Of a DNA stretch of 64,000 nucleotides, positions 9,010-10,987 are shown piece after piece. Each line of letters opens with the position of its first letter. Positions within the stretch are counted from its first letter, which is position 1. The notes below the pieces were generated by a model. That model was not told the DNA's origin. It ran no database searches and saw only the letters and a list, made by a program, of their open reading frames with translations. The position numbers were made by a program, and so were the translations under genes. Source of the DNA: Iphione sp. A-MEVVRFRX5 (lineage: Eukaryota); assembly GCA_976226885.1 (NCBI GenBank), contig OZ320314.1:88164001-88228000 (forward strand), given 5' to 3'.

Positions 9010-9995
9010 CGGTCCTCCTCACAGGTAATCTTGGCTGCGAGTCCAGGGACAAAAGCCGGAGTCCCATGCGGGCTCCTCGCTGAATGAACGGCCTGCAGGG
9101 AAGGACCCCATGACCCATACTTAAGACTCGCAAGAGGCAGAAATTAGGGAGGTCCCCCGCACGTCTGGTTCATTTAGTAGTGGAATGGGACATTATCGGT
9201 GGACACGTTGACCGTTGCGTAAGCCTGGGAGCCTGGTGAAAAGGTCCCCTCAGCAGTTAACTCGCCGAGTGACCACTGCAGGCAGTACTTTCACTGATGA
9301 ACGGGACAAATTGATGGCACTTTTAGAAATCGAACACTTAAGTTATATGTATTTGTGGCGTGTATACGGCGATTGCGTGTTGTGTGGTTTATATTTAAAT
9401 GGCCTTCGTTAATTGTCATAGGATCCCCTGTTAAATGACTCTCTTTGTCGCGCATCTAAATCTAATCTGGGCCTGTGTGTTAGTGGTCAAAACGTAGTGG
9501 CGTTATTAACTACCTGTCAAGGCTCCCAGTGTGTGGTCTCTTGTGTCAGTCCTGACTTCTGTCCGTCAGGTGGGTCCAATCGGGCTCCCTACCTCCATGA
9601 ATGCCTCATCATGCCTGCTGTTTAAGTGGTCTTCGTAGCTAGTTAGACCCGGACAGCAGACAGACTGGACAGGTGAGTGGCATTCCCAGCATGATGCAAA
9701 GCACCGTGATTTGGGACAAGGCAGACAAATTCAGTAGGTCTCCAGCGTTAAAGCAGACAGGGTCTTCTTCCTTAATAAAATGTAGGTGTATGGTTAGAAA
9801 CAGCGAGTTTTCGGTTACAGTATCAAATGAGCGCCGTGGATATCAATCCAGATTTAGATTATGTTTGTGATGCACCGGTTCAATATAAAACGCTCTTTGG
9901 AATGTATGTGCTAAATGTCATCGGCTTGATAAAATTGCTAGTTTTTCTCTGTGTAGTGACTTTTCCACTAATGAGTCCATTTTCTTTTTTTGCAG

Positions 9996-10046
9996 GTAAG
10001 TTGAGTGCTCCTACTGACAACTTTGGTCGTGATCTGGCTTACACAA
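9996..10046 (+). other. Candidate recursive-splice site / RS-exon (51 nt, phase 1-1, open: GKLSAPTDNFGRDLAYT)
   Basis: CTAAT branch-like motif near 9968-9972, U-rich tract, TGCAG|GTAAGT at 9995/9996, and a second donor CAA|GTAAGT at 10046/10047. Confidence 0.5.
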
Positions 10047-10987
10047 GTAAGTTTTATCATCTTTTCGTCCAGATGTCCCATAGATTTGTACTGGACTGGA
10101 ACCTATTTGAATCATGCCCCGATAGTGTCATCCAGAGATAAGAGCTTCCCTTCTTGAAGTTGCCTTCAGTTCATTTGTCAAGTGAGGATATTTGTAAACC
10201 TTTTGTTTAAGCCAACGGCCCACCTGGTCCTATGGTATTGTTTACTGATGGAAGAAGAGTCACCTACCTTATGCGATTGTCATGCATCTATAAACAAATG
10301 ATGCAGCCACACAAAGAAGATCGATTTGCACACAAAGCCTTTGACAGACAACGTGGAAGAGAGAGCAGATCTGTGATGAATAACATACCTTCCCCTCTGG
10401 TCTTATTTACTCATTTTCTACGGGATAAGCAGAGTACAGAACTCTTTGTCTCGCACGTTATTTACGAGATCTTTCCAAGTTCAGGTATTGCATATGGTAC
10501 GAAGACAGCACGTTACAAAGTGACCCTACTCGCCTAGAATCTTTACAAATCAGATTAAAGTGTAGGGAAAGTCGTCGTGGGCAAATCGCCTCACTTTCCT
10601 GTGATAATGATCGTAAAATCCAGAGACTCGATAATCAGTGGGATAACCGTGCAGCCGGAACGGAGCCAGCCACACATCACCGATAGTTGGGTAATTTGAC
10701 CAATTGTTTCCATTGTGAGGTAAGCACAAACAGCGAGGCTACAAAATGTGACCGATTATGTATTATGGACGATAATAATTTGCCATACAAATTACGCATG
10801 GAACAATGTATTCCAGAAGGACCAACATTTGGCCCAAAATTTGGTACTCACTCTTTAATGAGGTGTTGTTAGTATAGCACATGCCATTGTTTCATACCCG
10901 CTGTTTTGTATCGCATCCAGTATGAATAGTAAATGTATTATTCTTTAATTATATGAATATGCAGAAAGTTTTATGATCAGCACCAGG

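What the first reader, a model, noticed from the sequence alone, without database searches (positions are those of the whole stretch)
9672..10052. Strong recursive-splicing signature with a 51-nt in-frame RS-exon
A branch-like CTAAT, a U-rich tract and TGCAG are immediately followed by GTAAGT (9995/9996), so splicing to this acceptor regenerates a donor. A second GTAAGT 51 nt later defines a frame-preserving phase 1-1 exon, and a strong upstream donor CAG|GTGAGT lies at 9672. This matches RS-exons described in long vertebrate neuronal genes and fly ratchet points. I do not know of it being characterised in this lineage. Alternative reading: the ORF from ATG 9827 reaches both donors in phase 1 and carries a hydrophobic stretch (VLNVIGLIKLLVFLCVVTFPLM), i.e. 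a first exon giving a membrane-anchored RasGAP, though that stretch may simply reflect T-richness.
Basis: partly seen in the sequence, partly recalled or inferred. Interest (0 to 1): 0.7.

Follow-up and report, generated by a model that had tools for sequence, protein, structure and literature searches.

The report
Probable recursive splice site, RasGAP intron
A 98-kb intron of a Ras-regulator gene in a spiralian invertebrate holds an intron-end signal fused to an intron-start signal, one of three on the gene's strand, so the intron is probably removed in steps, but no RNA data could be examined.

Summary
Homology mapping puts the site in a 97.8-kb intron of an nGAP/DAB2IP-type RasGAP gene. 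It lies 76 kb downstream of exon N2 (donor in phase 1) and 21.65 kb upstream of exon X (31650-31762, acceptor in phase 1). The 51-nt exon is open in that phase.

Two more fused acceptor-donor sites lie on the sense strand of this intron: site A at C2:88151383, with its own 45-nt downstream exon, and site C at 11045/6. They score 12.8-16.2; the best antisense site scores 7.1. Genome-wide motif density predicts 0.047 such sites per strand of this length, and three are seen.

The ORF from ATG 9827 is frame-compatible. However, it is T-rich (GC3 0.32 against 0.55-0.88 in the gene's verified conserved exons), has no relatives, and its hydrophobic stretch has no counterpart in orthologues. It is probably non-coding.

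The donor at 9672 cannot end a coding exon and is not the likely upstream partner.

No RNA run was listed, and conservation could not be reached, so use of the site is inferred only.

The scan has already noted similar sites in other long introns of this genome. This is a new member of a known kind.

The parts
9968..9972 (+). Branch-point-like CTAAT, 24 nt upstream of the AG
   Evidence: Sequence read.
9976..9995 (+). Polypyrimidine tract (12 unbroken pyrimidines at 9980-9991) followed by GCAG: the acceptor half of the composite site
   Evidence: Acceptor part scores 11.3 in the PWM scan.
9996..10001 (+). GTAAGT directly after the AG. This is the donor that would be regenerated once an upstream exon is joined here (site B).
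   Evidence: It has the top composite score (16.2) of 410 sense-strand AGGT sites in the intron.
9996..10046 (+). 51-nt candidate RS-exon. It is open in phase 1 and has TGA as third codon in phase 0. Its composition looks non-coding.
   Evidence: GC3 is 0.38. No relatives found.
10047..10052 (+). Downstream donor CAA|GTAAGT, which defines the RS-exon
   Evidence: score 4.9. Donors scoring 4.5 or more occur 0.73 times per kb in the intron.
9670..9678 (+). Strong donor CAG|GTGAGT (junction 9672/3). It cannot end a coding exon. It may be the end of a non-coding first exon or of a cryptic 103-nt exon, 9570-9672.
   Evidence: Stops in all three frames within 35 nt upstream and no ATG. Acceptor-like ccgtcag| lies at 9569/70.
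9827..9995 (+). ATG-initiated ORF of 56 codons ending in phase 1 at the site. Probably a by-product of T-rich non-coding sequence.
   Evidence: GC 0.37, GC3 0.32, T 0.39. No homologues. An ORF this long occurs upstream of 1.7% of AGGT sites.
11028..11051 (+). Second composite site in the window (site C): ttgtctgttttttcacag|GTGAGT, junction 11045/6. No good downstream donor within 300 nt.
   Evidence: (score 12.8).
31650..31762 (+). Exon X, the conserved downstream exon ([17 protein letters not shown]...TPSRLA). Its acceptor ccccttcag|AT is in phase 1 and its donor GCG|GTAAGT in phase 0. Homology to the Capitella protein reaches back to about 31613, so an alternative acceptor at 31611, also phase 1, is possible.
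   Evidence: tblastn with about 50 orthologues and sequence. Pecten isoforms differ by D or H at the split codon.
43253..43350 (+). Exon A ([26 protein letters not shown]...), the start of the PH_RASGAP domain
   Evidence: (PF25321, E 8.9e-07).
48440..48661 (+). PH-domain exon B (…[40 protein letters not shown]|GTAAGT)
   Evidence: PF25321, E 5.4e-34.

Best explanation
Position 9995/9996 is a recursive splice site (ratchet point) with a 51-nt RS-exon. It lies in the 97.8-kb intron between exon N2 (ends C2:88097867, TCG|GTGAGT) and exon X (window 31650) of an nGAP/DAB2IP-type RasGAP gene.

Proposed mechanism, all steps inferred:
1. In long-isoform transcripts, the 51-nt element is recognised by exon definition through its strong acceptor and the donor at 10047.
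2. N2 is spliced to 9996, which removes 76 kb, or 22.6 kb if site A at C2:88151383 is used first.
3. The junction recreates the donor TCG|GTAAGT.
4. This donor competes with the donor at 10047. If it wins, the 51 nt leave with the remaining 21.65 kb.

Sites A and C are probably further steps of the same process.

The sequence anatomy, the position in the intron and the statistics are shown. Actual use in splicing is not.
For: - The composite motif matches the fly consensus (Y)nNCAG|GTAAGT (consensus as quoted in PMC5126111).
- Homology mapping places it in a long sense-strand intron. N1 and N2 lie at C2:88095822-88097867. Exon X lies at 31650-31762.
- The N2 donor and the X acceptor are both in phase 1.
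- The three best composite sites among the intron's AGGT positions (410 on the sense strand, 435 antisense) are all on the sense strand, scoring 16.2, 14.4 and 12.8. The next sense site scores 7.2 and the best antisense site 7.1.
- Genome-wide motif density gives 0.047 expected; three are observed.
- Sites A and B are single-copy and the three share no flanking sequence.
- Sites A and B each have a downstream donor, at +45 and +51. Fly RS-exons are about 50 nt (PMC8605326).
- Across the genome, 26 of the 100 listed strict motifs sit in same-strand clusters within 300 kb, and none sits in an opposite-strand pair.
- The exon content and the upstream ORF look non-coding.
Against: - No RNA run was listed, so there are no junction reads, lariats or saw-tooth coverage.
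- Conservation in a relative could not be tested. The walk along the relative's contig stopped more than 26 kb short of even its PH exon.
- Genome-wide, the motif is barely commoner than its backward control (103 vs 98; 1132 vs 911). A lone motif is therefore usually chance.
- A conserved coding first exon of this same gene (60985-61033) also ends in a pyrimidine-rich tract plus AG|GTGAGT. It scores 7.4 here and 11.6 in the relative, so first-exon donors can mimic the motif.
- Unlike most cryptic fly RS-exons, both candidate RS-exons are multiples of three and open in frame.
- Sites B and C are only 1.05 kb apart, an odd spacing for subdividing an intron.
- The splice-site scores come from generic weight matrices written from memory, not trained on this species.
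Confidence: 0.55

Rival explanations
1. The site is only the donor of an alternative first exon. Transcription would start around 9.5-9.8 kb, translation at ATG 9827, and 9995|GTAAGT would splice to exon X, giving a RasGAP isoform with a hydrophobic N-terminus. The pyrimidine tract would then be coding sequence (PFSFFA).
For: - The ORF runs 56 codons from an ATG in the correct phase; G|AT gives Asp before SAYEK.
- Only 1.7% of the intron's AGGT sites have such an ORF upstream.
- Orthologues have many short alternative N-termini that join exactly at this exon.
- The gene has at least one conserved mini first exon with a pyrimidine-rich end.
Against: - GC3 is 0.32 and T is 0.39, against GC3 0.55-0.88 and T 0.15-0.25 in nine verified conserved exons; the short alternative first exon at 60985-61033 has GC3 0.50.
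- The word search found nothing, and phmmer found no hit in 1.84 billion representatives.
- No similarity to any N-terminus of about 120 orthologues. Hydrophobicity is 2.56 against 1.93 or less in 60 orthologue N-termini.
- It does not explain the downstream donor at +51, or sites A and C.
- Pyrimidine runs cannot encode stop codons, which inflates ORF length.
Confidence: 0.15
2. The motif is a chance juxtaposition in T-rich intronic DNA with no role in splicing.
For: - Genome-wide counts of the motif nearly equal those of the backward control.
- By the strict pattern this site is a singleton.
Against: - Three composite sites lie on the sense strand of one intron where 0.047 are expected, and none lies on the antisense strand.
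- A branch-point motif, a long pyrimidine run, a perfect donor and a second donor at +51 all occur together.
- Site A has the same layout.
Confidence: 0.2
3. 9996-10046 is an ordinary in-frame alternative cassette exon that adds 17 residues between the N-terminal module and exon X. On this view it starts with GTAAGT by accident.
For: - It is 51 nt long and open in phase 1 between two phase-1 exons.
- Mollusc orthologues carry an optional phase 1-1 cassette of 19-23 residues at this position.
Against: - A profile of the mollusc cassette does not rank this peptide among the top intronic peptides.
- GC3 is 0.38.
- No relatives found.
- A perfect donor at the first six bases of an exon is exactly what defines an RS-exon, so this reading collapses into the 'expressed RS-exon' variant of the main one.
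Confidence: 0.07

Closest known systems
Drosophila intronic ratchet points with cryptic RS-exons (Burnette 2005; Duff 2015; Joseph 2018/2021, PMC8605326)
   Same: - Juxtaposed acceptor and donor with the consensus (Y)nNCAG|GTAAGT.
- Location deep in a very long sense-strand intron, with several sites per intron.
- A short RS-exon (about 50 nt) closed by a downstream donor.
- Exon content that does not look conserved or coding.
   Different: - A different lineage: a spiralian rather than an insect.
- No RNA proof.
- Both candidate RS-exons here are multiples of three and open in frame, whereas fly cryptic RS-exons are generally out of frame.
- The regenerated donor (TCG|GTAAGT) is not clearly stronger than the RS-exon donor.
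Expressed RS-exons, e.g. Ubx microexons mI and mII (51 nt each), and the annotated mammalian RS-exons repressed by the exon junction complex (Blazquez 2018, PMC6224609)
   Same: A 51-nt, frame-preserving exon that begins with a donor sequence. After it is joined to the upstream exon it can be kept or removed.
   Different: Ubx mI and mII are deeply conserved coding exons. This one has non-coding composition and no detectable relatives.
Vertebrate RS-sites in long neuronal genes (Sibley 2015)
   Same: The YAG|GT site with an RS-exon, the donor-competition logic, and a host gene from the SynGAP/DAB2IP/RASAL2 family, which is neuronal.
   Different: Vertebrate RS-exons usually carry a premature stop codon. 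Here the relevant frame is open; the stop is in phase 0 only.

Membership tests
Recursive splice site / ratchet point with RS-exon | Juxtaposed strong 3' and 5' splice sites, (Y)nNCAG|GTAAGT | tested here: met
   ttttctttttttgcag|GTAAGT at 9995/6. It has the top composite score in the intron.
Recursive splice site / ratchet point with RS-exon | Lies on the sense strand inside a long intron of the host gene | tested here: met
   Homology-mapped exons N2 (C2:88097750-88097867) and X (window 31650-31762) bound a 97.8-kb gap with no detectable conserved exon between them. The intron is inferred from homology, not from RNA.
Recursive splice site / ratchet point with RS-exon | A downstream donor that defines a short RS-exon (about 50 nt) | tested here: met
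   CAA|GTAAGT at +51. Site A has CAG|GTAGGA at +45. The chance of such a donor falling 30-100 nt downstream is about 5% per site.
Recursive splice site / ratchet point with RS-exon | Splicing intermediates: junction reads from the upstream exon to the site, lariats, saw-tooth coverage | not testable with these tools
   No RNA run was listed for this sequence, so read laying could not be used.
Recursive splice site / ratchet point with RS-exon | Conservation of the acceptor|donor core in related species | tested here: inconclusive
   The relative's contig (ERZ25767047 ctg37724) was walked 23 kb upstream without reaching even its PH exon. Further steps were blocked because its gene calls read through stop codons.
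Alternative coding first exon of the nGAP/DAB2IP family | ATG-initiated ORF ending in the phase of the common acceptor | tested here: met
   ATG 9827, 56 codons plus one base; exon X acceptor is in phase 1.
Alternative coding first exon of the nGAP/DAB2IP family | Coding-like composition and conservation, as in the gene's verified exons | tested here: not met
   GC3 is 0.32 against 0.55-0.88 in nine verified conserved exons (0.50 in the short alternative first exon at 60985-61033). No homologues. By contrast, the real mini first exon at 60985-61033 is conserved in the relative.
Alternative coding first exon of the nGAP/DAB2IP family | A transcription start upstream of the ATG | not testable with these tools
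   No RNA or CAGE data. There is no CpG-rich island at 8.5-10.5 kb; CpG observed/expected is 0.51-0.85.

The most novel reading that the evidence does not exclude
Sites A (45 nt) and B (51 nt) are expressed, in-frame RS-exons. After each recursive step, the contest between the regenerated donor and the exon's own donor would decide whether 15 or 17 residues are inserted between the N-terminal module and the ERRGS/PH region of the RasGAP. The non-coding exon ending at 9672 would be coupled to inclusion. This would be a recursive-splicing-based isoform switch in a spiralian, outside the two lineages where recursive splicing has been demonstrated.
Probability: 0.12. Interest if true: 0.6.

Novelty: new member of a known kind. 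Interest (0 to 1): 0.45.

Why it matters
In the literature read here, recursive splicing is documented experimentally in Drosophila and in vertebrates (PMC8605326, PMC5126111). The open-access library held no paper describing it in molluscs or annelids.

A well-placed, statistically supported set of fly-type ratchet sites in a spiralian gene adds to the evidence that stepwise removal of very long introns is a general bilaterian mechanism. This genome also shows same-strand clusters of the motif.

The locus is easy to test. One RT-PCR or one total-RNA data set would settle it, because both flanking exons and the exact junction are now defined.

It also corrects the gene model. The PH exon lies at 48.4 kb, the common phase-1 exon at 31.65 kb, and the N-terminal exons 66-68 kb upstream of the window.

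Tried and rejected
1. RNA evidence. The look-up of sequencing runs listed no run, so read laying was never usable.

2. Protein conservation of the ORF and RS-exon. The word search and the full phmmer search found nothing. Pfam gave only sub-threshold noise.

3. An early mistake. I first took exon A (43253, phase 0) for the first common exon and concluded that the ORF was out of frame. This was wrong. Exon X at 31650 lies between them and is in phase 1.

4. Homology to mollusc exons. The 51-nt exon resembles the optional mollusc cassette (LSRSLDF..GR..), and 9724-9774 (DKFSRSPAL) resembles the oyster exon DKFSRSPIL. Profile searches over all intronic peptides ranked these no better than noise, so I dropped both.

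5. Repeat origin. Sites A and B are single-copy, and the three sites share nothing beyond the motif. No tandem repeats and no Rfam family.

6. Walking the relative's contig towards the matching intron. I gained 23 kb in three steps, then stalled on gene calls that read through stop codons.

7. A random genomic control sample. The antisense strand, the flanking 56 kb, simulations and whole-genome pattern counts served as controls instead.

8. The 'PDZ-like' antisense ORF at 6511-6885. It has no Pfam match.

Full report
**Observation.**
- CAG|GTGAGT has its junction at 9672/3.
- CTAAT lies at 9968-9972.
- A 12-nt unbroken pyrimidine run lies at 9980-9991, followed by GCAG ending at 9995.
- GTAAGT lies at 9996-10001, and CAA|GTAAGT at 10046/7, exactly 51 nt later.
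- ATG 9827 opens a 104-codon ORF that reaches both donors with one spare base.
- CAGGTAAGT occurs once on the + strand of the window and never on the - strand.
- There are no tandem repeats and no Rfam family. The 500 nt around the site are single-copy in the 1.18-Gb genome.

**Host gene.** The window is C2:88164001-88228000 (+). RasGAP-domain exons lie 8 kb beyond its end. The gene belongs to the nGAP/DAB2IP/RASAL2/SynGAP family. Of about 120 orthologues fetched, the closest are a chiton, a brachiopod and an annelid, each about 60% identical. The organism is therefore a spiralian of unresolved phylum.

I mapped the exons one at a time by tblastn and Pfam:

| Exon | Position | Content | Phase |
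|---|---|---|---|
| N1 | C2:88095822-962 | ..PLPIWEPHFCVL.. | – |
| N2 | C2:88097750-88097867 | ..RLDGGKAEFDKRWGYETLESIKENAIQHYPF | donor TCG\|GTGAGT, phase 1 |
| X | 31650-31762 | [23 protein letters not shown]\|GTAAGT | acceptor ccccttcag\|AT, phase 1 |
| A | 43253-43350 | PH_RASGAP start | phase 0 in, phase 2 out |
| optional | about 46.0-46.2 kb | – | – |
| B | 48440-48661 | PH_RASGAP, E 5e-34 | – |

- Pecten isoforms differ by D or H at the codon before SSYEK. This is what a split N|AT codon predicts.
- No conserved exon was detected between N2 and X.
- Site 9995/6 therefore lies 76.1 kb into a 97.8-kb sense-strand intron, 21.65 kb before exon X.
Exons were searched singly, and frames were settled by arithmetic. 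One local frame check was translated but not searched.
- The N run at 55668-55805 was left untouched.
- No contig that I took for human was met.

**A correction of my own.** Finding exon X reversed that. They have TGA as third codon only in phase 0.

**Is the site more than chance?**
- I scored every AGGT with simple weight matrices: pyrimidine tract plus YAG, then GTRAGT. The sense strand of the intron gives 16.2 for site B (9996). It gives 14.4 for site A (C2:88151383 = L004:7383): ttttctcttttctatttcttttag|GTAAGT with a CTAAC branch motif. It gives 12.8 for site C (11046). After these it drops to 7.2.
- The antisense strand peaks at 7.1.
- Across all 154 kb held, nothing else exceeds 9.7. 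Sixty Markov simulations peak at 11.0.
- Genome-wide, Y6-N-YAG|GTRAGT occurs 1132 times, against 911 for the backward control. That gives 0.047 expected per 97.8-kb strand. Three are observed, a Poisson probability of about 2e-5. Given site B, the probability of the other two is about 1e-3.
- The strict motif occurs 103 times against 98 for its control, so single motifs are mostly chance. However, 26 of the 100 listed copies fall in same-strand clusters within 300 kb, and none falls in an opposite-strand pair. This pattern is expected if giant genes of this genome use such sites.
- Sites A and B are single-copy, and the three share only the motif.
- Sites A and B each have a downstream donor, at +45 and +51. 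Donors of that strength occur 0.73 times per kb. Fly RS-exons are about 50 nt (PMC8605326).

**The first-exon alternative.**
- The ORF is in the right phase. ORFs this long precede only 1.7% of AGGT sites.
- Its composition is intronic: GC 0.37, GC3 0.32, T 0.39. Nine verified conserved exons have GC3 0.55-0.88 and T 0.15-0.25; the short alternative first exon at 60985-61033 has GC3 0.50 and T 0.29.
- It has no relatives in the word search or among 1.84 billion representatives.
- It matches no orthologue N-terminus, and its hydrophobicity (2.56) exceeds that of all 60 orthologue N-termini (1.93 or less).
- Both candidate RS-exons also look non-coding (GC3 0.38 and 0.43).
- One caution remains. 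The genuine mini first exon at 60985-61033 is conserved in a relative with synonymous-type changes, and it too ends in a pyrimidine-rich tract plus AG|GTGAGT. Dual use cannot be excluded.

**The donor at 9672.** All three frames close within 35 nt upstream and none holds an ATG. It cannot end a coding exon. It may end a non-coding first exon, since translation could start at the conserved Met inside exon X, as in a Limulus isoform. It may instead end a cryptic 103-nt exon starting at 9570. It is not needed for the recursive model.

**What could not be done.**
- No RNA run was listed.
- Conservation of the site was out of reach. A relative's contig holds the orthologous gene: 56% identity in the long disordered exon and about 90% in the C2 exons. 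Its introns are long and transposon-laden, and the walk stalled.

**Comparison and verdict.** The anatomy is that of fly ratchet points with RS-exons. The length and frame recall expressed RS-exons such as Ubx mI and mII, which are 51 nt (PMC8605326). The library held no report of recursive splicing in molluscs or annelids.

Earlier notes of this scan describe similar sites in other long introns of this genome. This is one more instance, not a first. One of those notes calls the animal a lancelet, which my protein comparisons do not support.

I rate recursive use at about 0.55, chance at 0.2, first-exon-only at 0.15 and plain cassette at 0.07.

Noticed in passing
G000:C2:88151383 (= L004:7383; 12.6 kb upstream of window position 1): Site A is a very clean composite site: ttttctcttttctatttcttttag|GTAAGT with a CTAAC branch motif. 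It has a downstream donor CAG|GTAGGA at +45, giving a 45-nt exon that is open in phase 1. It is single-copy. It is the second-best composite site in the 97.8-kb intron.
   Followed up: partly
window 60985-61033 (+) and L010:~13444-13500 (-): A mini first exon, ATG GTG ACA CAA ATG GCT ACT TCA GAT..AG|GTGAGT (MVTQMATSDASPFPSDR), is conserved in the relative's contig as MVTTTMATSDGSSLCSGR|GTGAGT, with mostly third-position changes. It is a real alternative first exon upstream of the C2 exons. In both species it ends in a pyrimidine-rich tract plus AG|GT.
   Followed up: partly
window 9570-9672 (+): A possible 103-nt cryptic or non-coding exon, bounded by ctgtccgtcag|GTGGGT and CAG|GTGAGT. It has stops in all frames.
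   Followed up: no
window 48440-48661 and 56041-56072: The PH-domain exon is at 48.4 kb (PF25321, E 5e-34), not next to 56.04 kb. The 'poison micro-exon right after the PH domain' noted earlier at 56041-56072 rests on a misplaced exon.
   Followed up: partly
window 31604-31649 (+): Homology to the Capitella protein (LSFNGLSRSPLD|SAYDK against [13 protein letters not shown]|SAYEK) continues upstream of the strong acceptor at 31649/50. Exon X therefore probably has an alternative upstream acceptor at 31611 (phase 1), or an internal start at ATG 31625.
   Followed up: no
genome-wide, e.g. C1:129248027-129517708 (+), C10:31794275-31866107 (+), C1:30988436-31199669 (+): Strict ratchet-type motifs form same-strand clusters of 3-4 sites within 70-270 kb. 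There are 15 adjacent same-strand pairs within 300 kb and no opposite-strand pairs, against about 1.4 same-strand pairs expected.
   Followed up: partly
window 15703-15945 (+): CAG|GTGAGT at 15945/6 follows an 81-codon ATG ORF, but in phase 0, which does not fit the phase-1 acceptor of exon X. It has no Pfam match.
   Followed up: partly
L019 and L020 (relative contig ERZ25767047 ctg37724): The relative's PH-to-C2 intron is over 26 kb and holds transposon-like ORFs (DUF6589, RecQ-type helicase). Several of the contig's gene calls read through stop codons, so exact look-ups of their products fail.
   Followed up: no
window 6511-6885 (-): The antisense ORF that was called PDZ-like has no Pfam match at E of 1 or below.
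   Followed up: yes
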